Assembly (NCBI GenBank): GCA_002269645.1
Contig: NIVC01003820.1
Coordinates: 11,155 to 75,154 of the forward strand
From: Macrostomum lignano
Lineage: Eukaryota
DNA: 64,000 nt
Reading direction: 5' to 3'
Shown: positions 2,387 through 47,509 of the stretch, piece by piece
Layout: each line of letters starts with the position of its first letter
Numbering within the stretch: position 1 is the first letter of the stretch
Position numbers and translations under genes: made by a program
Notes under the pieces: model-generated
Databases searched by the model: none
The model's input: the letters and a program-made list of their open reading frames with translations, nothing else
What the model was told of the DNA's origin: nothing

Positions 2387-12821
<10,435 letters not shown>

Positions 12822-13295
12822 GTTTCTCTATCGTTGTAAAAGCAAAAAACCCCAAATGTCTCAAAGATCTGCTTTTGTAGCCAGCTTTTATATCTGTCAT
12901 ACGGATCGTTATTGCCAATTATCTGCGTTGGGAAACATTCAGGCCGGCTTCAGGTAATCCGAGAGCAATTTCTCTTCGGTAATTAATCGCCCGGATCATT
13001 AGGACTCAAGCATAACTTGTTGGATAGCAACTAAAATGATGTAAGAAACTCGAGGCAAAATATCGATTTTGGATTTCCTTGTTGGTGCTAATGAGACGCA
13101 GAATTCGTCACCCGAATCCCAAGATTAGCGGTCTTTATCGACGCGTACCCACTGGAAATATTAGAAGCCTCTTCATCAATAGGTGGTGCGCTTTTATTAT
13201 GAATTTCTAACAGCACAAAATCACCTTTTGATAATGTCAATGCATCACAGATCGACCCCGTATTCAGATGATGTATGCCCTCACTGAAGCCTCTG

Positions 13296-14842: not shown

Positions 14843-16046
14843 TCACTGCTGCGGACCATAGTAGCCGCCTTCGGTTCGCCAGTCAGGCGCTCCGGTCCCA
14901 CTGGTACCTACTGTCGAGTTTTGATGGTGCGACTGCTGCTGCTGAGGCTGGTTGTTGCTGGTGCCTCCGCTGCCCCTGCCACCCCTGCCACCAGTGAAGA
15001 CGGTCAGAATGAGAAATGCTCCGGAAATCAGGGCGCACAGGAGCGACCAGCCGAGCTTGTCTGAGTGGGTCACGGTTCGAGCAATGCTGGCCGCGATCAG
15101 GCCGCTGATGCCTGGTGGGGAAAGTGAGTTTCGGGAAGTGGCTTGGCAGTTTGGGCTTTGGCGGAGAGTGACGCAATGGGTGAGGCGGAGAGTGATACAG
15201 TGGGTGAGGTGGAGAGTGATACAGTGGGTGAGGCGGAGAGTGACACAGTGGGTGAGGCGGAGAGTGACACAGTGGGTGAGGCGGAGAGTGACACAGTGGG
15301 TGAGGCGGAGAGTGACACAGTGGGTGAGGCGGAGAGTGACACAGTTGGTGAGGCGGAGAGTGACACAGTGGGTGAGGCGGAGAGTGACACAGTGGGTGAG
15401 GCGGAGAGTGACACAGGGGGTGAGGCGGAGAGTGACACAGTTGGTGAGGCGGAGAGTGACACAGTGGGTGAGGCGGAGAGTGACACAGTGGGTGAGGCGG
15501 AGAGTGACACAGTGGGTGAGGCGGAGAGTGACACAGTTGGTGAGGCGGAGAGTGACACAGGGGGTGAGGCGGAGAGTGATACAGTGGGTGAGGTGGAGAG
15601 TGACACAGGGGGTGAGGCGGAGAGTGAAACAGGGGGTGAGGCGGAGAGTGACACGACACAGGGGGTAGGCGAGGAGTGACACAAGAGAGACAAAGATATT
15701 ATATATGGACATATGAGTGACACACAGAGTGCCACAAAGAGTGTGGTGAAGAGTGAAAAGTGGGCCATCTGCGGCCGGCCCAGCCCTCACCTGCCAATAT
15801 CATGCAGCCGGCATCCACAAGCAGCACAATATTATTGCCCTCGAAAATGTCGAGAAAGGTGCAGGCAAACGTGAACGCCAGTCCAATAAAGTAAGTTATT
15901 AAACCGATAATTAAAAAGGCGGTCTTCGCGTCATTCTGTTGAGCGTCGAGCAGGAAGACGTCGTTAGCCGACAGCCAGACAATGAAGCCGATTGAAGACA
16001 GAATGAAGGCCAACCGAAGCCACAGCGGCCGTTCATGGAAGATCAT
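14843..16046 (-). CDS. Small four-transmembrane protein, claudin/PMP22-like, 174 aa
   Basis: Exons 16046-15791 (donor G|GTGAGG) and 15111-14843 (acceptor CCACCAG|), phase 1. Four hydrophobic segments and a Gly/Gln-rich tail. Family assignment from topology only. Confidence 0.7.
15165..15665. repeat. 24-bp minisatellite GTGGGTGAGGCGGAGAGTGACACA
   Basis: About 20 units filling the intron of the four-TM gene. Confidence 0.95.
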
Positions 16047-16548
16047 TTGAGGGCCCGATCAGAGTGCCAGCTTTAGCCAACGGAGACGCGCTAGGAGAGT
16101 GCGTTTTCGCTCTCGCTGTTTTGGGATTTTAGACAGCCGGATTGCTGTTGACACAGCCTTGGAGGAGGGCCGCAGCAACTCTTCCTGCCTGCTCGGTGGA
16201 AAATTGCTCCATTGGACGAGGGCAGGTGTACTTGGCAGAACACTTGGGAAGGAAGGTGGCTGGCCACCGGGCGACCACCTCAATTCTGACGCGTGCCGTA
16301 CTTCCTTCTGAGCTAAACCTGCCCTCTACCTCCCCAGTCCTGTGTCCGTGCCCCTCTAGCTTAGGGGGATTATAGTTAGACACGAGCCCCGCCCTAAGCT
16401 GCCCACCCCAGACCATCTGCCAGGTACTGTACGTGCCAGCAAAACCCAATTCTGTACTCCGATCTGCTGCAAAGATAGCCGCGTTGCACTCGGGTGAAGA
16501 AATCAATTCCAATTGTTCATTGCTAAAAACGAGTTCACGCTTTTTCGG

Positions 16549-17975
<1,427 letters not shown>

Positions 17976-18899
17976 CAGTATAAAAGTGGCACATGACAGG
18001 CACCTAATTGCATAAAAATGAAGGAAAGCTTTAAGAACCAGTTCGGTCACATACCATAACTGCGCATATAAATAAGAATTTTAAATAATTAATGCCTTGA
18101 CTTGACATAGCAAAAATGCGTCTTTATGGGCATACCAAGTCTTGATTAATTCGTTTTTTTAGCTCGCAAGTCTTCTGGCAATAATCTAAGACGGAAATTG
18201 GACTGCAAATGAGCTTTCTGCCAGGGTTTCAGTACTGAACCTGCTGTGTCGTACCTACGAGCGTTAAATGATTTTTTGTTTAAGTACACCAATATTCATT
18301 TTTCAGCCTCTGCTGCTACCACACGGTCACCTCTATTTCATAACGGATCAATTTATATAATTTTATAATTTTTCTAATAAATTTAGAAGTGGAATGTACT
18401 CGCGGTTTTCTGAGACATAGTTAATTGGTTGAATCTTTGTTGAAAAAAACAAGAATGTTGTTCTTTTAAAAGCAAATTTCTCAATAGTTTATTTGTGATG
18501 CAAGTTTTAAGCTGTGCATCAAACTACAAATCCAACACTTAAAGTATCCTATGTTTTAATGAACAATCAGCCTACTAACAAGTAGCAAATATGAGACATG
18601 CAATGGGCTGCCTAGGAAAGACTAAGTTAAACTTGAACTGCCATAGTGCAGAACAATACTCTAATTGAAGTTAGTCCAAGGCCGAATCTCTCAACAACTA
18701 TGAAAATTATTTGAAGGCTTAACTTCGCACATTGGATGTGACCACGCATATACTCTGTCAAATTTAAATATTGAAAAATAAGTCTACCAAAGACTGGAAA
18801 AAGCAAAATTCAAGTTAACATACGTTGATAAAGAGAGCCGAGTCCGATCTGTGGCTGTAAATATTACAGAAACTTATGCACTGTAAGCATGAGATGAAG

Positions 18900-19012
18900 A
18901 GCAGAGATCAGAGACACAGTGTGAGACACAAGGCCGAGATCAGAGACACAGGCTGAGACACAAGGCAGAGGTCAGAAACACAGGCTGAGAGACACGGCAG
19001 AGGCACTGCTAT
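18900..19012. repeat. About 3 copies of the 32-bp unit, inverted relative to the 20.4-21.4 kb array
   Basis: GACACAGGCTGAGACACAAGGCAGAGGTCAGA matches the reverse complement of the array unit at 30 of 32 positions. Confidence 0.85.
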
Positions 19013-19489
19013 ATTGCTTTATCTGTTAAAATAAATCAAGCCTAGACAGACTCAAGTCAAATGCGATATCGATGGGTAGCCTACTCACTTGACAACCCCC
19101 CAACCAGCAGCAACAATACGCCACCACGTTCTACTTTATTGCTCCTAGCCTGCTGACGTCAGTCGATTTGACTGGAACCTAGTTTGAGTCAATCTTTTAA
19201 ATAGATAAAGCAGTTTTCTTTTAGTTGAAGCAAATAAAAGCCGTGAATCTCCTGGTCCACCTCCATAATTGCGGACACGCCTCGGTCTTTAATAGGTAGC
19301 ATCGATTCCCCAAATCACACCTGCTCTGCAGTGGGTGCAATTGCAGCATTTCGTTGGATGAAATCGAAAAATGCGGCACCTTTCGCAGCTCCTGACCATC
19401 GAACCCACCGACTTACAGGTGCCTCATCGGTTCTCCAACCTCAACCCAGCTTCTTACCCGCCCGCCTGCAGCTGAAGCCGCATCTCGCC

Positions 19490-19857
19490 ATGCTCAACAC
19501 GCCTCTCCATCTGCTCCTTCTGTGTCTGACGACCGTCGCTCTCCCCGAGTCGCTCCGCCTGACGGCCACAAGTGGCGAAGGTCTGGAAGCTCTCGTGGCT
19601 CAGGTGAGTGGGTCATCCCACAAGATTAGCACTGCCCATGCATGCAAGCACACGCAGCTTTGTCAGCAGCCTCAGCCTCAAAGTTTTCAGCCCACAGTCG
19701 GCCATGGCAGCCCGAGAGACCACCAGTGAGTTCAGTCGCCGAAGTCCACCAGCTTGCTGTGAAGAAGTGGCGCGGGATGAAGAGAGGATTCTGGGATCGG
19801 TACAAGTACTGCAGCAGCTTCTACCAGCCGCTCTCGTGCTGGGGACTGCCTCGCTAG
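19490..19857 (+). CDS. Putative secreted neuropeptide precursor, 72 aa
   Basis: Exon 19490-19603 (gccATG; signal peptide MLNTPLHLLLLCLTTVALP; donor CAG|GTGAGT) joined to exon 19753-19857 (acceptor CCACCAG|) in phase 0 gives ...LEALVAQLAVKKWRGMKRGFWDRYKYCSSFYQPLSCWGLPR*. Other acceptors are possible. Confidence 0.55.
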
Positions 19858-20414
19858 CGGCTGAGCCATCCACAGACCTGACAAGAGGCCTGACACTCCT
19901 GACGAGAGGAGTCTGACAACTATGACTAGCTCTTGTGTTGTGTACAAAGCTCTTCCTTATCACAGTAGGGCCTAGCGGGGCCGTAGCCAAGAGGTCAGTG
20001 GGGTCCGTGACCCCCATTGGCTGACTAAAGAACATGGAGTCCCCTGACCAGCAGCTCCGGCTCTTTCTTCAAAACTTCCTGTGCCCCCCTACTGAAACTC
20101 CTGACTGCTCCTGCAGCCAGTGCCAATACCCGTACAAGTAGGTCTCGAACGCACCAGAAATCGTCTCTAAGCTCTCAAACGCCCCCACACCGAGCCTCAA
20201 TGTCTCAAACTACTCAAAATATTTTATCAAGTGCAATCGGTAGCAAGTCTGCAGGCGTACTGGCTTTTGTATCTTAATAAGCGCTCGCTTTTGTCCAGAG
20301 CAAATATGCAAGAAGGACTTCATTTTAGTTTCTTGGCATCCAAACAAGTGCCTCAAGTACATTATCCACACCCTGATATTAAGGTAGAGCTTGTGTCCCG
20401 TGCTCAGTAGTGGC

Positions 20415-21450
20415 TGTGTCTCTGATCTCTGCTTTGTGTCTCTAATGTCTGAATTGTGTCTCTGATCTCTGAATTGTGTCTCTGATCTCTGAATTGTGTC
20501 TCTGATCTCTGAATTGTGTCTCTGATCTCTGAATTGTGTCTCTGATCTCTGCCTTGTGTCTCTGATCTCTGCCTTGTGTCTCTGATCTCTGCCTTGTGTC
20601 TCTGATCTCTGCCTTGTGTCTCAGGCTGTGTCTCTGATCTCTGTTTTATGTCTCAGGCTGTGTCTCTGATCTCTGCCTTGTGTCTCAGGCTGTGTCTCTG
20701 ATCTCTGCCTTGTGTCTCAGGCTGTGTCTCTGATCTCTGTTTTGTGTCTCAGGCTGTGTCTCTGATCTCTGCCTTGTGTCTCAGGCTGTGTCTCTGATCT
20801 CTGCCTTGTGTCTCAGGCTGTGTCTCTGATCTCTGTTTTATGTCTCAGGCTGTGTCTCTGATCTCTGCCTTGTGTCTCAGGCTGTGTCTCTGATCTCTGT
20901 TTTGTGTCTCAGGCTGTGTCTCTGATCTCTGCCTTGTGTCTCAGGCTGTGTCTCTGATCTCTGCCTTGTGTCTCAGGCTGTGTCTCTGATCTCTGTTTTA
21001 TGTCTCAGGCTGTGTCTCTGATCTCTGCCTTGTGTCTCAGGCTGTGTCTCTGATCTCTGTTTTATGTCTCAGGCTGTGTCTCTGATCTCTGCCTTGTGTC
21101 TCAGGCTGTGTCTCTGATCTCTGCCTTGTGTCTCAGGCTGTGTCTCTGATCTCTGTTTTGTGTCTCAGGCTGTGTCTCTGATCTCTGCCTTGTGTCTCAG
21201 GCTGTGTCTCTGATCTCTGCCTTGTGTCTCAGGCTGTGTCTCTGACCTCTGCCTTGTGTCTCAGGCTGTGTCTCTGATCTCTGCCTTGTGTCTCAGGCTG
21301 TGTCTCTGATCTCTGCCTTGTGTCTCAGGCTGTGTCTCTGATCTCTGCCTTGTGTCTCAGGCTGTGTCTCTGATCTCTGCCTTGTGTCTCAGGCTGTGTC
21401 TCTGATCTCTGCCTTGTGTCTCAGGCTGTGTCTCTGATCTCTGCCTTGTG
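20415..21450. repeat. 32-bp minisatellite TCTGATCTCTGCCTTGTGTCTCAGGCTGTGTC, with 20-bp precursor units on the left
   Basis: About 26 units of 32 bp preceded by TGTGTCTCTGATCTCTGAAT 20-mers. Confidence 0.95.
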
Positions 21451-22119
21451 TCTCTCTCTCCACGCCTCTCTTTCGCCCTTTCTTCATCTACCTCACCAAC
21501 TCCCCCCTGTAAGCGCCTGCTGCCTAGTGCGTGGTGGCGCGCATGGCAATGATTTTACTCCTGGTATTGCTTATGCAATGTACATCCAGTGTGCTTTCTC
21601 GCCGAATAGGTTGTCCCCAGGTGGCTGGAGTCCTGCGAAATTTTTGCCTTTTCCAACTTCAAGTAGTCTAAAGACCCCCATCCATCGCAATGCATTGTAC
21701 AAAAAGGCCTGAAAATCAGTATAATATATAAGGAGAAGTGAGCCTCAAAATAAAATTTCATAATTTCGTAGTAGGACGTGCACTGAGTGCCTCACTCTTA
21801 AGCCCCTTTCCTCTGATCAGGCGGCAGATCGGCCGCAGCAGAGGGCCAGCTGTCTCAACTGTCTCTGCGCTGCGTAGCCGCGAGGACGAGGGGAGGTCGC
21901 CGCTCCTTGAGGCCTGCAGCTGGATGCCAGGGGAAGAGATGAAGCTGAAAGAGTGGTTAGGGAGAGAACTGTTGAATTTTTTGAAATTCAGCCATAAAAA
22001 ATATAAAATTTGACTTTACGAGCCGAACAGTCTTCCTTACACTCTATCTCATATTTGCTTAGCACTCCCCCCTACTGGGGGACGAAACTATCATGTCACC
22101 CCGTTCGATCACACTTCAC

Positions 22120-24035: not shown

Positions 24036-24408
24036 TGGTAAAGAGGCATGAAAAGCGGCTGTTCGGATCCCAGAGGCACACTCACTCAAATAGCGTGCTA
24101 AACAGCAATTGTTTCTTCAAATTTCGATCGTCATCATGCCAATTGAAAGGGAAAGCGGTTATGCTTTTTGGTAACTGGTAGTAGAGCTCGGGTTGCTTAA
24201 CTAATTTTTTAGCTCCAGTCCGCATCGCAGTAATTTCGAGTAAAGTATTCGATCTAGAAAAGCAATCAAATTATAAAAAAAATGATCAGGGAAGTTTTGC
24301 TTTTTACGAACTATCAAACAAATAAACACTTAGTTTGAATAGTTTTTCAAATTTTAGTTTCTTTTAAAAAACATTTTGGCGCCAATTTAAACAAATAATC
24401 AAACATAC

Positions 24409-24754
24409 CCGACTGGGAAATCTCGCTGGTCTCAACTTCGGCCAGTTTTGCCGCCACCGCAGCTCCGTTGCCGAGGGGCTCAGAGGACACCAGGGACCAG
24501 AGCAGGTCCCCAGCTTGATACCACTGCTCCTCCTCGAGGAAGAAGTTCTCGTCGTCAATGTACGGAATGTCAGAATCCTCAGCTTGATGACTATCCGACT
24601 GTCGGAGCCCTTTGACCTTCAACGGCGTGAGGGAGTCTGGATAAAGTCGGTCAAGACTACTCCCAGCTTCTAGAACTGGGCCGTTTGTAACAATCCGGTC
24701 GATGCAGTGGTTGCCATGGAGACGAGATGACGCCACAGCTTGTCTGTTGCCCAT
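24409..24754 (-). other. Probable exon of an unidentified gene
   Basis: GC-rich open frame (MGNRQ...DIPYIDDENFFLEEEQWYQAGDLLWS...) ending at a G|GTATGT donor; the reading frame is not certain. Confidence 0.35.
24710..24723. promoter_or_regulatory. RFX X-box motif
   Basis: The reverse complement GTCTCCATGGCAAC matches the X-box consensus GTYNCY-AT-RGNAAC exactly. Confidence 0.5.
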
Positions 24755-26013
24755 AGTCAGTAAGCAGACTGCCCCGGCAATCTACACTCCTCTATGCCGC
24801 GAAATCATTAGGCATGCTTTGTGAAGCCGCTTCTCTGGCCGCGTTATAAAATAGAGGATGGGAGAAAAAGGAAATTGGGGAGAGTCTGGGAGAGAGACAG
24901 GAAGGGATCCGATGAGGAACAGGCTGGCATTGCTCGCGAAGGAGCGGACTCGTGGGAGCAGAGGAGATTGGGCCGCCTGCCTGGCTCTGGCTGTTCGCCC
25001 CTCTGCCAATCCACAGCTTTTTCATTAAAACCGATCGCCCATTCAAACTGGGTGTACGCGTTCGGTGCTTCTGGCCCTCTGCACCTGGGTATAGGCCTTC
25101 TCATCTGGGACACGAGAGTTCTCAGACTGCTCATCATTAATGCACTCTCTTCCTGTACTATATTATACACCTATTCCTGACAAACAGACAGATGGAGAAT
25201 GACTTGGAATGGCTGTTTTCATGATCGATTATTGAATAGCAATCGGTGCTTGAATGGAGCAACTAAGGCGTATGTCGAGACTTATAAAGTTGGGCTTATT
25301 TTCCACAAATTTTCAGTGCAAGGCGACAGTTCTCATTACAAAGCAGAGGCAGAAAGACAAGTCAATTACTTGTGGATCTCGTGGAAGAAAACCCATTCGT
25401 GAAAACTGAAGTCACTGTAACAAGCTCCGCGAACGACTGCCGAACACCCAGACGGCAAACGTAAGAACATAATTGCAATATAGTTTGCAAAAATAAACAC
25501 ATAAATTTAAAGTGAGAAGTCAGTTCTGTGGCTACACCTTTTATTCCCATGACTTGAAAATACAGCAAAGTTTTGCTGAGGTTGGAAGTCTTAAGGCTGT
25601 GCTATATTAGTGTTATACTAGAAATTTGCATACCATACAAGCTCTAGCTATGCTCAACTCTGAACTACACTTACTTAATTGCACAACAGAGAGCCATCGT
25701 TTTAAATCATTAATCATTCCTTGTTTTTGCATTCGATGCCGCATTATGACAACAGCGTTGAATCGGTTTTCATCTGACGGATTGCGACGGTGGGCAAGGC
25801 TTCTAAGTGATTTGCCAATATATATCAGCCTCTGTCAGCGAGGCTTTGGATTGGGAAGATTCCGATGATTTGTTGCTTAATTCTGGAGAATAAGGGCGAG
25901 TTCTGACGAGTCGACGACGTAAAAAGCAAGCTAATGGGTGTTCTTTAAGGCAACTATTAGCCATTTTGTTTAGTGGGGATCTATGCCTATAGAACGCAGC
26001 GCAGTGCTGGGGT

Positions 26014-29000
26014 ACCAAGGGGCTTTGGCACCAAGGGGCTTTGGCACCAAGGGGCTTTAGCACCAAGGGGCTTTAGCACCAAGGGGCTTTAGCACCAAGG
26101 GGCTTTAGCACCAAGGGGCTTTAGCACCAAGGGGCGCCAGCACCAAGGGGCGCCAGCACCAAGGGGCGCCAGCACCAAGGGGCTTTAGCACCAAGGGGCT
26201 TTAGCACCAAGGGGCTTTAGCACCAAGGGGCTTTAGCACCAAGGGGCTTTAGCACCAAGGGCTTTAGCACCAAGGGGCTTTAGCACCAAGGGGCTTTAGC
26301 ACCAAGGGGCTTTAGCACCAAGGGGCTTTAGCACCAAGGGGCTTTAGCACCAAGGGGCTTTAGCACCAAGGGGCTTTAGCACCAAGGGGCTTTAGCACCA
26401 AGGGGCTTTAGCACCAAGGGCTTTAGCACCAAGGGGCTTTAGCACCAAGGGGCTTTAGCACCAAGGGGCTTTAGCACCAAGGGGCTTTAGCACCAAGGGG
26501 CTTTAGCACCAAGGGGCTTTAGCACCAAGGGGCGCCAGCACCAAGGGCGCCAGCACCAAGGGGCTTTAGCACCAAGGGGCTTTAGCACCAAGGGGCTTTA
26601 GCACCAAGGGGCTTTAGCACCAAGGGGCTTTAGCACCAAGGGGCGCCAGCACCAAGGGGCTTTAGCACCAAGGGGCTTTAGCACCAAGGGGCTTTAGCAC
26701 CAAGGGGCTTTAGCACCAAGGGGCTTTAGCACCAAGGGGCTTTAGCACCAAGGGGCTTTAGCACCAAGGGCTTTAGCACCAAGGGGCTTTAGCACCAAGG
26801 GGCTTTAGCACCAAGGGGCGCCAGCACCAAGGGGCTTTAGCACCAAGGGGCTTTAGCACCAAGGGGCTTTAGCACCAAGGGGCTTTAGCACCAAGGGGCT
26901 TTAGCACCAAGGGGCTTTAGCACCAAGGGGCTTTAGCACCAAGGGGCTTTAGCACCAAGGGGCGCCAGCACCAAGGGGCTTTAGCACCAAGGGGCTTTAG
27001 CACCAAGGGGCGCCAGCACCAAGGGGCTTTAGCACCAAGGGGCTTTAGCACCAAGGGGCTTTAGCACCAAGGGGCGCCAGCACCAAGGGGCTTTAGCACC
27101 AAGGGGCTTTAGCACCAAGGGGCTTTAGCACCAAGGGGCTTTAGCACCAAGGGGCTTTAGCACCAAGGGGCTTTAGCACCAAGGGGCTTTAGCACCAAGG
27201 GGCGCCAGCACCAAGGGGCGCCAGCACCAAGGGGCGCCAGCACCAAGGGGCGCCAGCACCAAGGGGCTTTAGCACCAAGGGGCTTTAGCACCAAGGGGCT
27301 TTAGCACCAAGGGGCTTTAGCACCAAGGGGCTTTAGCACCAAGGGGCTTTAGCACCAAGGGGCTTTAGCACCAAGGGGCTTTAGCACCAAGGGGCTTTAG
27401 CACCAAGGGGCTTTAGCACCAAGGGGCTTTAGCACCAAGGGGCTTTAGCACCAAGGGGCTTTAGCACCAAGGGGCTTTAGCACCAAGGGGCTTTAGCACC
27501 AAGGGGCTTTAGCACCAAGGGGCTTTAGCACCAAGGGGCTTTAGCACCAAGGGGCTTTAGCACCAAGGGGCTTTAGCACCAAGGGGCTTTAGCACCAAGG
27601 GGCGCCAGCACCAAGGGGCGCCAGCACCAAGGGGCTTTAGCACCAAGGGCGCCAGCACCAAGGGCTTTAGCACCAAGGGGCTTTAGCACCAAGGGGCTTT
27701 AGCACCAAGGGGCTTTAGCACCAAGGGGCTTTAGCACCAAGGGGCTTTAGCACCAAGGGGCGCCAGCACCAAGGGGCGCCAGCACCAAGGGGCTTTAGCA
27801 CCAAGGGGCTTTAGCACCAAGGGGCTTTAGCACCAAGGGGCTTTAGCACCAAGGGGCTTTAGCACCAAGGGGCTTTAGCACCAAGGGGCTTTAGCACCAA
27901 GGGGCTTTAGCACCAAGGGGCTTTAGCACCAAGGGGCTTTAGCACCAAGGGGCTTTAGCACCAAGGGGCTTTAGCACCAAGGGGCTTTAGCACCAAGGGG
28001 CTTTAGCACCAAGGGGCTTTAGCACCAAGGGGCGCCAGCACCAAGGGGCGCCAGCACCAAGGGGCGCCAGCACCAAGGGGCGCCAGCACCAAGGGGCGCC
28101 AGCACCAAGGGCGCCAGCACCAAGGGGCTTTAGCACCAAGGGGCTTTAGCACCAAGGGGCTTTAGCACCAAGGGGCGCCAGCACCAAGGGGCTTTAGCAC
28201 CAAGGGGCGCCAGCACCAAGGGGCGCCAGCACCAAGGGGCTTTAGCACCAAGGGGCTTTAGCACCAAGGGGCTTTAGCACCAAGGGGCGCCAGCACCAAG
28301 GGGCGCCAGCACCAAGGGGCGCCAGCACCAAGGGGCTTTAGCACCAAGGGGCGCCAGCACCAAGGGGCTTTAGCACCAAGGGGCTTTAGCACCAAGGGGC
28401 TTTAGCACCAAGGGGCTTTAGCACCAAGGGGCTTTAGCACCAAGGGGCTTTAGCACCAAGGGGCTTTAGCACCAAGGGGCTTTAGCACCAAGGGGCTTTA
28501 GCACCAAGGGGCTTTAGCACCAAGGGGCTTTAGCACCAAGGGGCTTTAGCACCAAGGGGCTTTAGCACCAAGGGGCGCCAGCACCAAGGGGCTTTAGCAC
28601 CAAGGGGCTTTAGCACCAAGGGGCTTTAGCACCAAGGGGCTTTAGCACCAAGGGCTTTAGCACCAAGGGGCTTTAGCACCAAGGGCTTTAGCACCAAGGG
28701 GCTTTAGCACCAAGGGGCGCCAGCACCAAGGGGCTTTAGCACCAAGGGGCGCCAGCACCAAGGGGCTTTAGCACCAAGGGGCTTTAGCACCAAGGGGCTT
28801 TAGCACCAAGGGGCTTTAGCACCAAGGGGCTTTAGCACCAAGGGGCTTTAGCACCAAGGGGCTTTAGCACCAAGGGGCTTTAGCACCAAGGGGCGCCAGC
28901 ACCAAGGGGCTTTAGCACCAAGGGGCGCCAGCACCAAGGGGCTTTAGCACCAAGGGGCTTTAGCACCAAGGGGCTTTAGCACCAAGGGGCTTTAGCACCA

Positions 29001-30179
29001 AGGGGCGCCAGCACCAAGGGGCGCCAGCACCAAGGGGCGCCAGCACCAAGGGGCGCCAGCACCAAGGGGCTTTAGCACCAAGGGGCTTTAGCACCAAGGG
29101 GCTTTAGCACCAAGGGGCTTTAGCACCAAGGGGCTTTAGCACCAAGGGGCTTTAGCACCAAGGGGCTTTAGCACCAAGGGGCGCCAGCACCAAGGGGCTT
29201 TAGCACCAAGGGGCGCCAGCACCAAGGGGCTTTAGCACCAAGGGGCTTTAGCACCAAGGGGCGCCAGCACCAAGGGGCTTTAGCACCAAGGGGCTTTAGC
29301 ACCAAGGGGCTTTAGCACCAAGGGGCTTTAGCACCAAGGGGCTTTAGCACCAAGGGGCGCCAGCACCAAGGGGCGCCAGCACCAAGGGGCGCCAGCACCA
29401 AGGGCGCCAGCACCAAGGGGCGCCAGCACCAAGGGGCTTTAGCACCAAGGGGCTTTAGCACCAAGGGGCTTTAGCACCAAGGGGCTTTAGCACCAAGGGG
29501 CTTTAGCACCAAGGGGCTTTAGCACCAAGGGGCTTTAGCACCAAGGGGCGCCAGCACCAAGGGGCGCCAGCACCAAGGGGCTTTAGCACCAAGGGGCTTT
29601 AGCACCAAGGGGCTTTAGCACCAAGGGGCTTTAGCACCAAGGGGCTTTAGCACCAAGGGGCTTTAGCACCAAGGGGCTTTAGCACCAAGGGGCTTTAGCA
29701 CCAAGGGGCTTTAGCACCAAGGGGCTTTAGCACCAAGGGGCTTTAGCACCAAGGGGCGCCAGCACCAAGGGGCTTTAGCACCAAGGGGCTTTAGCACCAA
29801 GGGGCTTTAGCACCAAGGGGCGCCAGCACCAAGGGGCGCCAGCACCAAGGGGCGCCAGCACCAAGGGGCTTTAGCACCAAGGGGCTTTAGCACCAAGGGG
29901 CTTTAGCACCAAGGGGCTTTAGCACCAAGGGGCTTTAGCACCAAGGGGCTTTAGCACCAAGGGGCTTTAGCACCAAGGGGCTTTAGCACCAAGGGGCTTT
30001 AGCACCAAGGGGCTTTAGCACCAAGGGGCTTTAGCACCAAGGGGCTTTAGCACCAAGGGGCTTTAGCACCAAGGGGCTTTAGCACCAAGGGGCTTTAGCA
30101 CCAAGGGGCGCCAGCACCAAGGGGCGCCAGCACCAAGGGGCGCCAGCACCAAGGGGCGCCAGAACCAAGGGGCTTTAGC
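26014..30179. repeat. 4.2-kb 16-bp minisatellite with two interspersed variants (ACCAAGGGGCTTTAGC / ACCAAGGGGCGCCAGC)
   Basis: About 260 units, with occasional 15-bp units missing one G. Confidence 0.98.
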
Positions 30180-30800: not shown

Positions 30801-31306
30801 GAGCAACCATCCACCTCCTGGACTCTCCAGAATAGGTATTTTACTGTTGGTTTGTCTAATAATAATATGGTTATTTTCTCTGACACGAAATTACGTTAAA
30901 CTAATTGATAAGAATATTTTTGCGTGGAATTCCCTACAGCGTGCAGTTGTTTAGCTGCAGTTTTCTAAAAATAGAAATTACACACGCGCGGCCTCACCTC
31001 GCTTCGCGAAATTGTTCACTTTAAATGTGCTGTACTGTGCACTATGCTAAATGCAATGCAATGCGTTAGTGTTTATTTTAAGCCATGACCAGTACAATTA
31101 CGTCCTTGTTAGTTTGTCAGAACTGCGGATTACCTAATTACTATTATTGTTGATGACTTCTTAGCGCAGAAAACAAGGCACTTTACCCTCTTGCAGTATA
31201 AAAATGGTACTATAGGACATAGGTAGATTGTAAGTCTATAAACATCAAAACCTGTAAAAAACGTAGCCTGCAGTCTACAATCTATAGGTTTAGTTTTATA
31301 CTAATC

Positions 31307-31852
31307 ATGAATTGCCTGCCGATTGCAGAGTTGGTGATGCATTACACACTAATCTGTGTGAGCACAGTCTGCTTGTGCATAGAAATCCAGCTCAATGAGA
31401 TATTCGATGGACTCAACTCTGAGTACAGCAGATACCTCGGCTACATCTGCCCCGTTATGGTGACGCTACTGAGCTTACTCAGGCTAACTGTCATTATCTT
31501 CAAGAATTGTTGCAAAAGAAAGAACAAGAAAAAATCTGGAAGCGGCTGCAGCTGGTGGTGCTTGTTGATGCAGCTTCTGGCTTGGCTCGCCTGCGCCGCT
31601 GGCTTCTTGGCCATGACCGTGCTCATCACCATCGGCCTGCCGCACATTCAAGGCGTCGTCTCGTTGGCGTCATCAGCGACGGTTTCAGACTGTCCAGGAA
31701 TCAACTTGGCCATTCGACTGTGGCGATTTCAAGCGGCAGTGGCCGGAGTGGCGGCTGGCGAGTGTCTGGCTCTCTTCGGCCTGAGAACTGCAGGGCTGGT
31801 GGCGGCCCCGAGACCAAGGGAGGAGGATGGCGTCATTTTCCAAGAAACATGA
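31307..31852 (+). CDS. Intronless four-transmembrane protein, 181 aa, unknown family
   Basis: ATG-to-TGA ORF in AT-rich flanks; four hydrophobic segments with a Cys/Lys-rich loop (KNCCKRKNKKK). Confidence 0.65.
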   Translation: MNCLPIAELVMHYTLICVSTVCLCIEIQLNEIFDGLNSEYSRYLGYICPVMVTLLSLLRLTVIIFKNCCKRKNKKKSGSGCSWWCLLMQLLAWLACAAGFLAMTVLITIGLPHIQGVVSLASSATVSDCPGINLAIRLWRFQAAVAGVAAGECLALFGLRTAGLVAAPRPREEDGVIFQET

Positions 31853-32744: not shown

Positions 32745-34789
32745 ATGGACCAGCAAGAGGACTCAGAAGCGACAGTCGATCTGAAGCAAACATTCTGCTT
32801 CGACTTTCTATCCGGGCCAGAAACTACGGAGGCGGCCAGTCACAGCAATCAGAGCAACCGCACCGACATCATGAAGAAGTACTTAGTCTACATGGAGCTA
32901 CCCAAGATTAGAGTGAGTGTCTGATATCTCAACTAATCTACTGGTAGTAGTTTAGATTTAACAAAAACTTTTGGTATTAAAAAGATTTTCATCACTGTTC
33001 TTACCAAGCCATTTTTATCTACACTGTACAGATTGGAGACTACAGAAAGTCGAGCTGCGTCTCCGGCAACGTGATCCGCTTTCACTTTCTGCTTCGTATC
33101 GCTCGCGATGAAGAGAATATGGTGCTGCGACTGCAACCCATCAAGGCCTACAAAACGCCCGTGGTGAACTTCGCCGTCATCCATCGGCCTTTCCTTGACG
33201 ATGACAGCGCTAAAGGTCCAATTCCAAAGAGTCCCGGTGTGCGCAGCCCGCTGATCAACTACGAAGGCGAAGAGACCAGTCCAGGAGTGCCCGACAGTCG
33301 TACCGATGATATCATTGAAGACTTTCAAAGCGACAAAGCTCAAGCGCCTAGTGTCGAAGATGAACAAAAGCAACAACAGGGACAGAGGCGATCAAGCGAT
33401 GCTAGCATCGGTAAATCTCAACCTAAACTGAAAGAAAGCCCGAAGAGGCGGTCCAGTCAGGCGAGTATCGACAAAGACAAAGTACAGCAGAAATCCTCAG
33501 AGAGCCCGAAGAGGCGGTCCAGTCAGGCGAGTATCGACAAAGACAAAGTACAGCAGAAATCCTCCGAGAGCCCGAAGAGGCGGTCCAGTCAGGCGAGTAT
33601 CGACAAAGACAAAGTACAGCAGAAATCCTCCGAGAGCCCGAAGAGGCGGTCCAGTCAGGCGAGTATCGACAAAGACAAAGTACAGCAGAAATCCTCCGAG
33701 AGCCCGAAGAGGCGGTCTAGTCAGGCCAGTATCGACAATGCCAAAGTACAGCAGAAATCCTCCGAGAGCCCGAAGAGGCGGTCCAGTCAGGCGAGTATCG
33801 ACAAAGCTCAACAAGAGCAGGCAAAGAGTCCCCAGAAACATTCGAGTTCAGAAAAGACCCAGACCCAGCCCTCAGAGAGTCCCAAGCGACGATCTAGTCA
33901 GGCAAGCACCGACGAGCAGCAGCGGTTAGAAGTAGAAGCGCCCGTGAGGCGGCCAAGCCAGACAAGTCTCGACCAGTCTAAAATGGCGATCGTTGATCAG
34001 AGACGCTCGAGCCAATCAAGCACAGGTGCTCAGCAGCAGCGATTTGAAGTTGAGGCGCCCGTTAGGCGGCCAAGCCAAGCTAGCGAAGATCTGCTTCAGC
34101 AGGCCGGGGCAGCAAGGCAGCAAGAGAGTCAAACCAGTTCGGAAAATCGTCAGTCTCAGGTACCGGAGACGTCTCAACAGAGACCTGCCCAGGGCATCTT
34201 GGCTGAGTCTCCAAAAAAGGCCCGACTTGAGATCGAGTCACCGACACCTCGTCAGGACATTTCCCCAGCTAGACTTCTCTCAGACGATAATGCAACCACT
34301 CGCACAGATACGACCGGTCGTCAAAAGCAGCGCCGTCCAAAGAAGTATTTTGTCTACTGCGAGATACCGAAGATCCTCCTTGGCGACTATCGCAACTCCA
34401 GCGTCATCTGCTCTGAGATTATCCACGCGCATTTCCTGATGAAAATTGCCAAAGATGAAGAAAGCAACCAGCCGCGTCTGAAACCGATCAAGCGGTATCA
34501 CCGGCCAAAAGTGAACTTTGCAGTCATTCACCGGTCGCTACTGGTTGACGACGACGCAATCGGGCCGATTCCTCGCAGCCCGAACGTTCGGTCACCGATG
34601 ATCCGCGAGGACGAGCCCGAGGAGGAAGACGACGTTCCGCCAGACAACGTGATGCACGCCACAATGGGCTTCTGCTACGGTCGCCTGCCCCGCTCTAAGT
34701 ACGAGCTGGTCACGCAGTGGTCGTTGGTCAATGGAGACGGTGGTGGACCGCCACTTCCTGAGCTCGTGCTCAGCAAGGCCGATGTGTGA
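32745..34789 (+). CDS. Uncharacterised 641-aa protein with two copies of an unrecognised domain of about 90 aa flanking a Ser/Gln/Lys-rich repeat linker
   Basis: Exon 32745-32912 (donor AGA|GTGAGT) plus exon 33032-34789 (acceptor TGTACAG|), phase 0; internal homology is visible by eye. An upstream in-frame ATG near 32595 is possible. Confidence 0.8.
33437..33806 (+). repeat. 66-bp coding tandem repeat (ESPKRRSSQASIDKDKVQQKSS), 5 full copies and 1 partial
   Basis: In-frame units at 33437, 33503, 33569, 33635, 33701 and 33767. Confidence 0.93.
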
Positions 34790-35381: not shown

Positions 35382-36636
35382 TTGGGTTGTAGCAAAAGTT
35401 TCGAGCGTTTTCTTTAAACTTCTAGCGCTTTCTCTAGAGAAATTTCTGGAATGTTCTATGGGGGTATACGAGTATAAGAGTGACCAGTGCGCACTACCGT
35501 ATCCACTTCATATGCTCAACCTTCAGCTACAATGGTTACGAAACAACACGATCAACGTCACCTCATTCGAGCATCTTTACTTTTCTGCTTCAAGCTGGGC
35601 AACTCAGCAGCTGAGGTGCATCGCAAGTTATGTCAGGCATGTGCCGAAGACTTTCTGAGCGATCAACGCTGCCATGTCTGGTTTGCGCAGTTCAAGAAGG
35701 GTACGACGAATTACTCGAAGGCAAGTAGCTCTCCGGTTACCCACCTGAGCTCGATATCCAGCAGCTTGCCCTGCTTTTCGAAGCTGAGCCATATCTTACA
35801 ACACGTGAAATTGCAGAGTACTTTAAAGTCTCTGCCATGACCACCGACCGCGGCCTTCATCAACTCGGCAAAGTGCACAAGCTTGGTCGATGGGTTCCAC
35901 ACGAACTTTCCCGTGAGAACAAGGATCAGCGCATCATCACATGCACCCAACTCCTGTCCTATCGTCGCAATCCAGGATCGCTCGATACTGGTTACTGGCG
36001 ATGAGGAGTGGGTGGCCAGTTTCAACACCACGCGCAAGCGCCAGTGGCTTTGCATGGCGGATCAGCCACAGCCAACGCCCAAACCTGATCTACACCAAAA
36101 GAAGGTCATGATGTGAGTCTGGTGGAATTCCAGTGGAATCGTCCACTGGGAGCTCCTGCCTCGTAACACCAGCATCACTGCCGATGTCTACTGTGAGCAG
36201 CTGGACAGACTGCATCAGGCTTTTGTCAAGCAGCAGGGCGCTGGCGCTAAAATTCGATTTCTTCACGACAACGCCCGACCTCGTGTGGCGAAGAAGACAC
36301 TACAGAAGCGGCTCGAGCTAGGCTGGGAAGTGATGCCCCACCCTCCCTACTCGCCTGATCTTGCGCCATCTGACTACCATCTGTTCTGCTCTATGCAGAG
36401 CCACATAAATGGTGTGACGTTAAAAGACGAGGAGGAGGTGACAGCCTGGCTCGAGCAACACTTCAAGTCGCTGCCGCCTGAGTTCTTTAAGAAGGGCATC
36501 CACGATCTCATCGCCAGATGGCAACAGGTCATTGATCAGGATGGTGATTATATCCTGGAATAGAAACTGTTAGGACTGGAAAAATGAATTCAAAGTTTGA
36601 GTGCAGAAACGCTCAGAACTTTTGTTACAACAACAA
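35382..36636 (+). mobile_element. Mariner (DD34D) DNA transposon, about 1255 bp, with a pseudogenised transposase
   Basis: Imperfect TIRs TTGGGTTGTAGCAAAAGTTTCGAGCGTTTT and AAACGCTCAGAACTTTTGTTACAACAACAA with TA on both flanks. Transposase 35532-36563 carries WVPHEL, TGDEEW, HDNARP and YSPDLAPSDY; two frameshifts and a TGA at about 36113. Confidence 0.95.
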
Positions 36637-38513: not shown

Positions 38514-38822
38514 CTATGAGCAGAGTATAAAGGAGCAACAGAGCAGCATCACCCACCGCCAGACGTATCGATCCTTTTTCGACGCTCGTCGCTCAAGGTG
38601 TCGATAGCGTTTGAGCAGCGTCTCGCGAGCAATTTCGTCATCATAGGGCTCGACGGTCTCGAAGCGCCGTTTCAGCGTGAACATGTTGCTCCAGGGACTC
38701 TCGTCACCTCCGTCGTTCGCGGGGACGGCATTGACAACGGCGTCCTTGGCAACGAGGCTGCCGGCAAGGAGCACAGCGCCGGACAGGACCAGCAGGGAGG
38801 CGAAGGCGTTGTTGCCGAGCAT
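38514..38822 (-). CDS. Putative secreted prohormone-like precursor, 102 aa
   Basis: ATG at 38822 follows an acceptor (TCCTCAG| at 38830) that pairs with a donor at 40220 (AAG|GTGAGT), defining a 5'-UTR intron. Hydrophobic N-terminus; basic sites KRR, KR, RR and KK. The C-terminus is uncertain. Confidence 0.55.
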   Translation of the reverse strand: MLGNNAFASLLVLSGAVLLAGSLVAKDAVVNAVPANDGGDESPWSNMFTLKRRFETVEPYDDEIARETLLKRYRHLERRASKKDRYVWRWVMLLCCSFILCS

Positions 38823-38857
38823 GAGTTCCACTGAGGACAGGAAGATTGCGATTGGAT

Positions 38858-40190
<1,333 letters not shown>

Positions 40191-43825: not shown

Positions 43826-47509
<3,684 letters not shown>

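What the first reader, a model, noticed from the sequence alone, without database searches (positions are those of the whole stretch)
19490..19857. Candidate novel cyclic neuropeptide precursor (KR-GFWDRYKYCSSFYQPLSCWGLPR)
Seen: gccATG, a signal peptide, a strong donor and a phase-0 acceptor give a 72-aa protein. After a dibasic KR site comes a 23-aa C-terminal peptide with two cysteines spaced C-x8-C followed by W. The ORF track splits this across frames and does not show it. Known: somatostatin, allatostatin-C, urotensin and MCH peptides are C-terminal disulfide loops released at basic sites; MCH has C-x8-C-W spacing and AstC ends in P-I-S-C-F. Inference: a possibly undescribed member or analogue of this group; homology is not established.
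Basis: partly seen in the sequence, partly recalled or inferred. Interest (0 to 1): 0.7.

Follow-up and report, generated by a model that had tools for sequence, protein, structure and literature searches.

The report
Unverified small cyclic-peptide gene candidate
The sequence can be read as a tiny two-exon gene for a secreted peptide with a disulfide loop, but such a pattern turns up by chance about once in every three to five windows of this size, and I could find no relative or transcript to show the gene is real.

Summary
The model runs from gccATG at 19490 through a leucine-rich signal-like start to a perfect CAG|GTGAGT donor at 19603/19604. A phase-0 CAG acceptor ends at 19752 and the stop codon is at 19855-19857. 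The product is 72 aa and ends in KR-GFWDRYKYCSSFYQPLSCWGLPR (C-x8-C-W).

The pattern is not statistically distinctive. Simulated windows give 0.23-0.46 such models each. The chosen acceptor is one of about 22 AG sites, and two equally good ones put the product in another frame. The proposed intron (149 nt, 58% GC) is unlike the verified introns here (at least 400 nt, 40-46% GC).

Some context favours a real exon. The locus lies in a complex GC-rich island of the kind that elsewhere in the window marks exons or transposon reading frames. A good acceptor-like site sits 18 nt upstream of the ATG. GC3 is 68% and 79% in the proposed frames. A perfect CRE lies upstream.

No homologue was found in 5.8 billion or 1.84 billion proteins, in JGI metagenomes, or in the literature. 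Defining features of MCH, AstC, EP/CCHamide and elevenin are each partly unmet. The closest likeness is the AstC tail, but the ring is two residues longer.

Verdict: a plausible orphan candidate, about 0.35 likely to be real. The host looks spiralian, possibly close to flatworms.

The parts
19154..19161 (.). Perfect palindromic cAMP-response-element-like octamer, TGACGTCA, 329 nt upstream of the ATG
   Evidence: 2 copies in the window against 0.52 expected; 7 of 100 shuffles reach 2. The position is suggestive, but its function is inferred only.
19196..19204 (+). TATA-like A/T-rich motif, TTTAAATAG, about 35 nt downstream of the CRE-like site
   Evidence: Read directly. It does not match the strict TATAWAW consensus. 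Weak, inferred.
19450..19471 (+). Acceptor-like site cttcttacccgcccgcctgcag|, ending 18 nt before the ATG. It could be a cis acceptor for a 5'UTR intron or a trans-splice acceptor.
   Evidence: It resembles the C-rich acceptors of verified exons in this window: CCCACCCCGCATCGCAG|, CGCTCCTTCCAG| and CCGTCCCGCACCTGCAG|. Splicing here would remove the upstream ATGs at 19358 (in frame) and 19371. Inferred.
19490..19603 (+). Proposed exon 1 coding part, residues 1-38. A signal-peptide-like start MLNTPLHLLLLCLTTVA (likely cleavage after Ala17 by the -3/-1 rule) followed by the beginning of the spacer.
   Evidence: One search gives the translation. This frame scores best of the three over 19466-19600, but the score is about 0. 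GC3 is 68%, against 62-81% in verified exons.
19601..19609 (+). Perfect consensus donor, CAG|GTGAGT
   Evidence: one of only 4 MAG|GTRAGT 9-mers in the window (2.3 expected by chance).
19604..19752 (+). Proposed intron, 149 nt
   Evidence: Its GC content is 58%. Verified introns of the MFS and TRAF genes are 40-46% GC and at least 400 nt. The acceptor GTCGCCGAAGTCCACCAG| has only 10 of 18 pyrimidines. Atypical.
19753..19857 (+). Proposed exon 2, residues 39-72 plus TAG. KK is at residues 42-43, KR at 48-49 (19780-19785), and the predicted peptide is 19786-19854.
   Evidence: The codon log-likelihood is +6.7 over 34 codons and GC3 is 79%; 8% of stop-free GC-matched windows score as high. This frame is the best one from 19754 to 19802.
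19810..19839 (+). Predicted disulfide ring from Cys58 (19810-19812) to Cys67 (19837-19839), C-SSFYQPLS-C, followed by Trp68
   Evidence: The disulfide itself is inferred.
18886..19002 (.). Left arm of the flanking satellite: 3.6 units of a 32-nt repeat, inverted relative to the right-hand array
   Evidence: 82-91% complementary to units in 20595-21444.
20415..21459 (.). Right-hand array of the same satellite (20-, 32- and 64-nt periods, about 33 units)
   Evidence: The 1.4-kb segment between the arms is unique within the window.

Best explanation
The locus is a small gene, on its own or trans-spliced, that encodes a 72-aa secretory prepropeptide. None of the steps below is shown.

Inferred steps:
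1. The mRNA 5' end is created at the acceptor-like site ending at 19471. This happens either by removal of a 5'UTR intron or by addition of a spliced leader, and it makes ATG 19490 the first AUG.
2. A short intron (19604-19752, or another acceptor in the same frame) is removed.
3. The signal peptide (about residues 1-17) directs the product into the ER.
4. A prohormone convertase cuts after Lys48-Arg49.
5. Carboxypeptidase may trim Arg72.
6. Cys58 and Cys67 form a 10-membered-residue disulfide loop.

The result would be a non-amidated 22-23-aa cyclic peptide, GFWDRYKYCSSFYQPLSCWGLP(R). Its monoisotopic mass is 2700.19 or 2856.29 Da when oxidised. It would act as an extracellular signal, most plausibly on a GPCR, in the manner of AstC/somatostatin/MCH-type peptides.
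For: - All the sequence elements are present.
- The donor is one of only four perfect MAG|GTRAGT sites in 64 kb.
- An acceptor-like site resembling the verified acceptors lies 18 nt before the ATG. Using it would remove two upstream ATGs.
- The locus lies in a 961-nt complex GC-rich island (19238-20198). Of the 18 such islands in the window, nearly all others coincide with Pfam- or homology-supported exons or transposon ORFs.
- GC stays high for 600 nt after the donor, unlike real introns here. That fits a short intron followed by a second exon and UTR.
- The proposed frames have exon-like GC3 (68% and 79%) and are the best-scoring frames locally. The alternative ORFs score negative.
- A perfect CRE and a TATA-like motif lie upstream.
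- The 8-residue tail FYQPLSCW resembles the arthropod AstC tail YFNPISCF beyond composition-matched draws (0.00075).
- The precursor layout equals that of AstC and MCH-type precursors (PMC8557429 supplement; PMC4772807).
Against: - No homologue was found in any search and no literature string matched.
- There is no transcript evidence.
- Codon scores are equivocal. Exon 1 is at about the 5th percentile of true coding windows. The combined score is reached by 14% of stop-free GC-matched windows. A presumably non-coding frame nearby reaches +7.9.
- The intron is atypically short and GC-rich, with a weak polypyrimidine tract.
- Competing acceptors at 19691 and 19698 destroy the peptide.
- All three plus-strand frames and one minus-strand frame are open here, so open frames carry little weight.
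Confidence: 0.35

Rival explanations
1. This is a chance assembly. The segment is unique, GC-rich, stop-poor non-coding DNA. An ATG, a leucine-rich stretch, a consensus GT and a convenient AG happen to line up, and no such peptide is made.
For: - Simulations give 0.23-0.46 such models per window, so P(at least one) is 0.19-0.33.
- About 19 models per window appear with any GT donor.
- Four overlapping open frames of 75-160 aa in the same 500 nt show that stop codons are simply rare here.
- Codon statistics do not separate the model from noise.
- There are no homologues.
- The intron composition and length are unlike verified introns.
- True neuropeptide genes are rare, at roughly 0.01-0.05 per 64 kb (my estimate).
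Against: - Complex GC-rich islands in this window are otherwise almost always exons or transposon ORFs.
- A perfect donor, a good upstream acceptor-like site, a Kozak purine and frame-specific GC3 enrichment coincide.
- The reversed real sequence gives 0 models.
Confidence: 0.3
2. Only the first exon is real. On this reading, 19472-19603 is an exon bounded by the acceptor at 19471 and the donor at 19604. It carries a start codon with a signal peptide, or an internal hydrophobic segment, of a larger plus-strand gene. Its next exon lies elsewhere, so the Cys-loop peptide is not part of the product.
For: - Both splice signals around 19472-19603 look like the verified ones.
- The segment is 132 nt, a multiple of 3, and is open in two frames.
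- Verified introns here are at least 400 nt and AT-richer, so a distant acceptor would be more typical.
- Uncharacterised plus-strand ORFs exist downstream, for example 31223-31849 and 32981-34786.
Against: - GC content does not drop after the donor as it does in verified introns.
- A minus-strand ORF at 24350-24781 and long satellites lie between this exon and the next plus-strand candidates.
- No homology supports any larger gene.
Confidence: 0.2
3. The island is a decayed mobile-element or pseudogene fragment. The unique 1.4-kb segment would be the loop of a foldback-like structure, or an inverted piece, flanked by inverted satellite arrays. The successive locally best frames would then reflect frameshifts in an old ORF rather than splicing.
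For: - Inverted 32-nt satellite arms lie at 18886-19002 and 20415-21459.
- The locally best codon score moves from frame 0 (19466-19600) to frame 1 (19634-19680) to frame 2 (19754-19802).
- The gag-like island at 3.1-4.9 kb shows the same multi-frame openness.
Against: - No Pfam match exists for any of the four ORFs.
- There is no second copy in the window.
- There are no terminal inverted repeats inside the unique segment.
- No protein relatives were found for the parts included in the 72-aa query.
Confidence: 0.1

Closest known systems
Allatostatin-C / somatostatin-type precursors
   Same: - There is a single peptide at the extreme C-terminus, after a dibasic site.
- An intramolecular Cys pair is followed immediately by an aromatic residue.
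- The tail FYQPLSCW matches the arthropod YFNPISCF conservatively at all 8 positions (score 29; 0.00075 of random draws). Lottia and Crassostrea tails match at about 0.02.
- The reference sequences are from the PMC8557429 supplement.
   Different: - The ring has 8 residues, not 6. Every AstC seen (arthropod, mollusc, brachiopod, nemertean) is C-x6-C. The candidate looks like an AstC ring with two extra Ser residues after Cys1.
- The precursor is shorter (72 aa against about 90-140 aa).
- It lacks the long helical spacer.
- No profile or sequence homology was detectable.
Melanin-concentrating hormone (MCH)-type precursors
   Same: - It is a short precursor with a C-terminal peptide of 20-30 aa after a dibasic site. 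The starfish ArMCHP is 88 aa with a 28-aa peptide (PMC4772807).
- The C-x8-C-W spacing equals that of vertebrate MCH (my own knowledge).
   Different: - Residue after Cys1 is Ser, not Met or Ile.
- The residue two before Cys2 is Leu, not Lys or Arg.
- Invertebrate MCH-type peptides have two more ring residues than vertebrate ones.
- MCH-type peptides are described only from deuterostomes, whereas this host is a protostome (spiralian).
Excitatory peptide (GGNG) / CCHamide
   Same: - Lophotrochozoan EPs have exactly eight residues between the Cys, followed by an aromatic residue and Gly. An example is Aplysia KCHGRWAIHACFGGN-NH2 (PMC12969411).
- Drosophila CCHamide has ...SCWGAH. The candidate has ...SCWG.
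   Different: - EP/CCHamide sits directly after the signal peptide.
- It ends in GGN/GAH-amide (Gly plus a basic site).
- It usually has His in the ring (PMC6617912).
- The candidate is C-terminal, non-amidated and has no His.
- Ring-anchored similarity is not above shuffles (0.24).
Elevenin / L11
   Same: The skeleton is C-x8-C-x-G, for example Phoronis KIDCRKYPFAPRCRGVW (PMC8557429 supplement).
   Different: - Elevenin lies just after the signal peptide and is followed by a long C-terminal remainder.
- The conserved ring motif (K-[YF]-P-F-A-P) is absent.
- Similarity is not above shuffles (0.53).
DUF285 / BspA-like leucine-rich repeat proteins (the only database hits)
   Same: The repeat core ...C[ST]SFNQPLNxW... 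matches CSSFYQPLSCW at about 8 of 11 positions.
   Different: - Those are 300-950-aa proteins with 6-9 tandem units, and the E-values come from summing the units.
- The candidate has one 17-aa stretch, a second Cys where they have Asn, and no flanking repeat.
- I judge this a coincidence, not homology.

Membership tests
MCH-type neuropeptide precursor | Single peptide at the C-terminus of a short precursor, preceded by a dibasic site | tested here: met
   KR is at residues 48-49 and the peptide is residues 50-72 of 72. Criterion from PMC4772807.
MCH-type neuropeptide precursor | Met or Ile immediately after the first Cys | tested here: not met
   Ser59 follows Cys58. Criterion.
MCH-type neuropeptide precursor | Basic residue penultimate to the second Cys | tested here: not met
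   The sequence is Pro64-Leu65-Ser66-Cys67, with no Lys or Arg. Criterion.
MCH-type neuropeptide precursor | Detectable sequence relationship to known members, or a cognate MCH-type receptor | tested here: not met
   phmmer against 1.84 billion representatives returned no precursor-like hit. The receptor question is not testable here.
Allatostatin-C type | C-terminal peptide after a dibasic site, with an aromatic residue right after Cys2 | tested here: met
   KR followed by ...SCW. Reference sequences.
Allatostatin-C type | Six residues between the two Cys | tested here: not met
   The candidate has eight. All AstC sequences retrieved (CYFNPISC, CLVNLISC, CLVNVIAC, CQVWIVSC, CFFHAVSC, CLVNLVAC) have six.
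Allatostatin-C type | Conserved ring and tail residues | tested here: inconclusive
   The tail similarity to arthropod AstC is significant when anchored at Cys2 (0.00075). It is weaker to spiralian AstC (0.02-0.22). The comparison is post hoc and covers only 8 residues.
Excitatory peptide / CCHamide | Two Cys separated by eight residues (lophotrochozoan form) | tested here: met
   Criterion from PMC12969411.
Excitatory peptide / CCHamide | Peptide located directly after the signal peptide | tested here: not met
   About 32 residues and a KR site separate the signal peptide from the peptide. Criterion from PMC6617912.
Excitatory peptide / CCHamide | Amidated C-terminus (GGN-Gly plus a basic site in spiralians) | tested here: not met
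   The product ends ...CWGLPR-stop, with no Gly-basic amidation signal and no Asn. Criterion.
Elevenin / L11 | C-x8-C-R-G peptide directly after the signal peptide, with a conserved aromatic-Pro-Phe-Ala-Pro ring | tested here: not met
   Only the ring size and the Gly at +2 agree. The position in the precursor and the ring motif differ.
Genuine neuropeptide gene (any family) | Transcribed and spliced as modelled, with neural or endocrine expression | not testable with these tools
   No transcript data for this organism are available. It is absent from the protein collections: the best hits of neighbouring genes are 52-65% identical.
Genuine neuropeptide gene (any family) | KR site and Cys pair conserved in orthologues | tested here: inconclusive
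   No orthologue was found. No sufficiently close relative is in the collections, so this absence carries little information.
Genuine neuropeptide gene (any family) | N-terminal signal peptide | tested here: inconclusive
   A heuristic was used. The 9-residue window LLLLCLTTV has a mean Kyte-Doolittle value of about 2.7 with no charged residue, and Thr-Val-Ala|Leu fits the -3/-1 rule. SignalP was not available. The n-region has no Lys or Arg.

The most novel reading that the evidence does not exclude
The locus encodes a genuine, so far undescribed AstC/somatostatin-superfamily ligand of a flatworm-like spiralian. Its AstC-type tail (aromatic-aromatic-amide-Pro-aliphatic-Ser-Cys-aromatic) sits in an MCH-sized C-x8-C-W ring. 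This would be an intermediate form linking the AstC (x6) and MCH (x8) peptide types, whose receptors are related rhodopsin-gamma GPCRs.
Probability: 0.07. Interest if true: 0.55.

Novelty: new variant of a known kind. Interest (0 to 1): 0.3.

Why it matters
If real, this would be an orphan cyclic neuropeptide in a poorly sampled spiralian lineage. Its ring and tail combination belongs to no described family. It would be a useful ligand candidate for deorphanising AstC/SS/MCH-like receptors, and a data point on how ring size evolves in this peptide group.

If it is not real, it shows how easily a tool-free reading of GC-rich, stop-poor DNA produces a convincing-looking prepropeptide. That is worth knowing when calibrating the scan.

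Tried and rejected
- **Word-indexed protein search with the 72-aa product.** No candidate at all.
- **Exhaustive phmmer against 1.84 billion representatives.** There were six hits. Five are DUF285/BspA-like repeat proteins and one is a low-complexity artefact. I rejected them as repeat-inflated coincidence.
- **Pfam.** Nothing for the product or for the four alternative ORFs of the island.
- **Rfam.** Nothing at gathering threshold for the whole window, and only noise at permissive threshold for 18800-20500. No tRNA or SINE head was found.
- **JGI metagenome scan with back-translated peptide words.** 600 pattern matches, none confirmed.
- **Synteny attempt.** A 20-kb locus around a TRAF orthologue on a 378-kb ENA contig (L002) has no counterpart of the peptide and is too distant anyway.
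- **Exact-string literature search, and motif searches in the supplements of two spiralian and xenacoelomorph neuropeptidome papers.** No match.
- **Codon-usage likelihood trained on 983 codons of verified exons.** Equivocal.
- **Poly(A) signal search.** There is no AATAAA or ATTAAA within 740 nt after the stop. The three verified genes lack one too, so I dropped this as evidence.
- **Species identification.** Not achieved. The host is only placed among spiralians.
- **EP/CCHamide and elevenin as families.** Considered because of the shared C-x8-C-x-G skeleton. Rejected on precursor layout, lack of amidation, and shuffle tests.

Full report
**What is in the sequence**

- An ATG at 19490 in the context ctcgccATGc.
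- 38 codons: MLNTPLHLLLLCLTTVALPESLRLTATSGEGLEALVAQ.
- A perfect donor, CAG|GTGAGT, at 19603/19604.
- An AG ending at 19752 that restores phase 0.
- 34 further codons, LAVKKWRGMKRGFWDRYKYCSSFYQPLSCWGLPR, and TAG at 19855-19857.

The product is 72 aa. KR is at residues 48-49, and the C-terminal 23-mer has Cys58 and Cys67 separated by eight residues, followed by Trp. The two exons fall in different frames of the mechanical ORF list.

**Host and surroundings**

The window is animal DNA.
- It carries a TRAF gene (RING and MATH exons, 43.8-47.5 kb), an SLC17-like MFS transporter (51.6-55.3 kb), DAP3 (57.3-60.4 kb, minus strand), a mariner transposase and a gag-like element.
- The closest named relatives of the MFS exon are molluscs at 50-58% identity.
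- The closest named relatives of the TRAF C-terminal half are a Macrostomum lignano protein (64%), bdelloid rotifer proteins (52-53%) and nematode proteins.
- The host is therefore a protostome and most likely a spiralian.
- Nothing more than 65% identical to these genes is in the collections. The species and its close relatives are effectively absent from everything I could search, and this limits all comparative tests.
- The genome is extraordinarily rich in micro- and minisatellites.

**Is it more than chance?**

I encoded the pattern as: ATG; a hydrophobic uncharged 9-mer in the first 30 residues; a G|GTRAGT donor or a single exon; any AG acceptor within 1 kb; a total of 45-150 aa; and a last dibasic site followed by 8-35 residues with exactly two Cys spaced 4-12.
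- The real window has two such start codons. One is the candidate and the other is a poor single-exon one at 12820.
- Windows simulated block by block from local second-order Markov chains give 0.42-0.46 per window, so P(at least one) is 0.33.
- Adding a purine at -3 and a YAG acceptor gives 0.23 per window, P = 0.19.
- With any GT donor, about 19 per window pass.
- The reversed real sequence gives none.

The bare pattern is therefore within chance expectation for a reader who scanned the whole window.

**The splice model**

Verified junctions in the window were located by homology.
- Their donors are G|GTGAGC, G|GTGAGT, G|GTAGGT and T|GTGAGT.
- Their acceptors are strongly C-rich: CCCACCCCGCATCGCAG|, CGCTCCTTCCAG|, TTTTAACTTCCGCAG| and CCGTCCCGCACCTGCAG|.
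- Their introns are at least 400 nt with 40-46% GC, against 56-65% in exons.

The candidate compares as follows.
- Its donor is one of only four perfect MAG|GTRAGT sites in 64 kb.
- Its intron is 149 nt and 58% GC.
- Its acceptor, GTCGCCGAAGTCCACCAG|, has 10 of 18 pyrimidines.
- Two acceptors of equal or better quality lie upstream. TTTTCAG| (exon start 19691) gives a truncated 50-aa product. CCCACAG| (exon start 19698) gives an unrelated 110-aa product.
- Eight of about 22 AG sites, including GCAG| at 19710 (exon start 19711), preserve the C-terminal peptide.

On the other side, the sequence cttcttacccgcccgcctgcag| ends 18 nt upstream of the ATG and looks just like the verified acceptors. Used as a cis or trans-splice acceptor, it would remove the upstream ATGs at 19358 and 19371 and make 19490 the first AUG. 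This is inference, not observation.

**Coding signal**

A codon model trained on 983 codons of verified exons gave the following.
- Exon 1 scores about 0 to -2. It is the best of the three frames, but only at about the 5th percentile of true coding windows.
- Exon 2 scores +6.7, near the coding mean of 9.4. Eight per cent of stop-free GC-matched windows reach that score.
- The combined score of 8.4 is reached by 14% of such windows.
- GC3 is 68% and 79%, against 62-81% in verified exons and 51-61% in the alternative ORFs.
- A different frame reaches +7.9 at 19658, so the noise level equals the signal.
- Stretches of 75-160 aa are open in all three plus-strand frames and in one minus-strand frame. 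Open frames as such carry little weight here.

**Context that favours a real exon**

- The locus is a 961-nt, high-complexity island of 57% GC (19238-20198) in AT-rich surroundings.
- Of the 18 such islands in the window, nearly all the others coincide with supported exons (TRAF, MFS, DAP3), transposon ORFs, or long unexplained ORFs.
- GC does not fall after the donor as it does in verified introns. That fits a short intron followed by more exon.
- A perfect CRE palindrome, TGACGTCA, lies at 19154-19161 (two in the window against 0.5 expected), with a TATA-like TTTAAATAG 35 nt downstream.
- The lack of AATAAA after the stop is uninformative, because the three verified genes lack it too.

**Context that complicates it**

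- The unique 1.4-kb segment is bracketed by the same 32-nt satellite in inverted orientation (18886-19002 against 20415-21459). This suggests a foldback-like arrangement or an inversion.
- The segment is single-copy in the window and has no internal terminal repeats.

**Homology**

- The word-indexed search of 5.8 billion clusters found nothing.
- Pfam found nothing.
- The exhaustive phmmer run over 1.84 billion representatives gave six hits below 1e-3. One is a low-complexity artefact. Five are DUF285/BspA-like repeat proteins, whose unit ...C[ST]SFNQPLNxWNVSNV... matches CSSFYQPLSCW in 6-9 tandem copies. The scores are sums over repeats of a 17-residue coincidence, and I do not regard them as homology.
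- A degenerate-pattern scan of JGI metagenomes confirmed nothing.
- A 20-kb locus around a TRAF orthologue on an ENA contig has no counterpart.
- No paper or supplement searched contains the peptide or its motifs in a similar setting.

**Comparison with known families, using criteria and sequences read from papers**

- **MCH-type (PMC4772807).** The C-terminal position and the Cys pair are met. Met or Ile after Cys1 and a basic residue two before Cys2 are not met. Invertebrate members have a larger ring, and the family is described from deuterostomes.
- **AstC (PMC8557429 supplement).** The C-terminal position and the aromatic residue after Cys2 are met. The tail FYQPLSCW is conservatively identical in character to the arthropod YFNPISCF (anchored score 29; 0.00075 of composition-matched draws). 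The match to Lottia and Crassostrea is about 0.02, and to Lingula 0.22. However, every AstC has six ring residues and the candidate has eight.
- **EP/CCHamide (PMC6617912; PMC12969411).** The eight-residue ring and the aromatic-Gly after Cys2 are shared. The peptide is not next to the signal peptide and is not amidated. Similarity is not above shuffles (0.24).
- **Elevenin.** The C-x8-C-x-G skeleton is the same. The layout and ring motif differ (0.53).

The candidate therefore works like the AstC/SS/MCH class of C-terminal cyclic peptides on paper, but it cannot be filed in any family.

**Mechanism, if real (all steps inferred)**

1. Signal peptide cleavage, probably after Ala17.
2. Convertase cleavage after Lys48-Arg49, and possibly at Lys42-Lys43.
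3. Optional removal of Arg72.
4. Formation of a Cys58-Cys67 disulfide.
5. Secretion of a non-amidated 22-23-mer of 2700.19 or 2856.29 Da, acting on a GPCR.

**Weighing**

The prior for a true neuropeptide gene in any 64-kb window is low, and chance models are common. Several independent but individually weak context features raise the odds: the island, the donor, the upstream acceptor, frame-specific GC3, the CRE and the AstC-like tail. My probabilities are:
- About 0.35 that a secreted peptide with this C-terminus is really encoded.
- About 0.3 that it is pure chance.
- About 0.2 that only the first exon is real and belongs to another product.
- About 0.1 that the island is a decayed element or pseudogene.

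The decisive data are transcripts from this species and the orthologous locus in close relatives. Neither is reachable with the tools at hand.

Noticed in passing
window 18886-19002 and 20415-21459: The same 32-nt satellite (TGTGTCTCTGATCTCTGCCTTGTGTCTCAGGC) lies in inverted orientation on both sides of the unique 1.4-kb segment that holds the candidate. The left arm has 3.6 units and the right array about 33. This looks like a foldback-like element or a local inversion.
   Followed up: partly
whole window, e.g. 1-744, 4893-6754, 16549-17975, 26014-30179, 38860-40189, 52454-53919, 59057-59948: The density of micro- and minisatellite arrays is exceptional: more than 30 arrays score at least 300. 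They include kb-long (TATC)n, (ACTA)n and (CTAT)n tracts, a 16-nt unit repeated 261 times, and arrays filling the introns of the MFS and DAP3 genes.
   Followed up: partly
window 8453-12827, minus strand: Probable receptor gene. The first exon (12546-12821) has a clear signal peptide ([26 protein letters not shown]). There is a weak ANF_receptor ligand-binding-domain match at 8453-9211, next to a proline/threonine-rich 26-nt coding repeat.
   Followed up: partly
window 32981-34786, plus strand: A 602-aa open frame with no Pfam match. It has 5.6 copies of a 22-aa repeat (SESPKRRSSQASIDKDKVQQKS) between two diverged copies of a roughly 60-aa unit (…GDYR.SS…F.HF.LKIA.DEE….L.PIK.Y..P.VNFAVIHR…).
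   Followed up: no
window 43823-47506 (+), 51617-55342 (+), 57321-60413 (-): TRAF (RING plus MATH), SLC17-like MFS transporter and DAP3 genes. Their exons are 56-65% GC with GC3 of 62-81%, and their introns are 40-46% GC. None has AATAAA or ATTAAA within about 600 nt after its stop codon.
   Followed up: partly
window 3101-4490 (+) and 35484-36560 (+): A gag-like retroelement fragment with a CCHC zinc knuckle, and a frameshifted mariner-type transposase (Transposase_1, 1.3e-12).
   Followed up: partly
window 24350-24781 (-), 38517-38867 (-), 15702-16557 (-), 31223-31849 (+): GC-rich complex islands with open frames of 117-209 aa and no convincing family match (only a weak Tweety hit at 31223-31849). 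One starts MGNRQ…, which looks like a myristoylation signal. These are probably exons of unannotated genes.
   Followed up: no
window 19233-19238: A canonical AATAAA on the plus strand lies about 250 nt upstream of the candidate ATG, inside the presumed promoter or 5' region. It may be fortuitous, or the end of an upstream transcript.
   Followed up: no
proteins P0014-P0018: DUF285/BspA-like repeat proteins, several with a giant-virus- or protist-like composition, share a CSSFNQPLNxW core with the candidate peptide. Their E-values are inflated by tandem repetition. This is a caution for short-peptide searches.
   Followed up: yes
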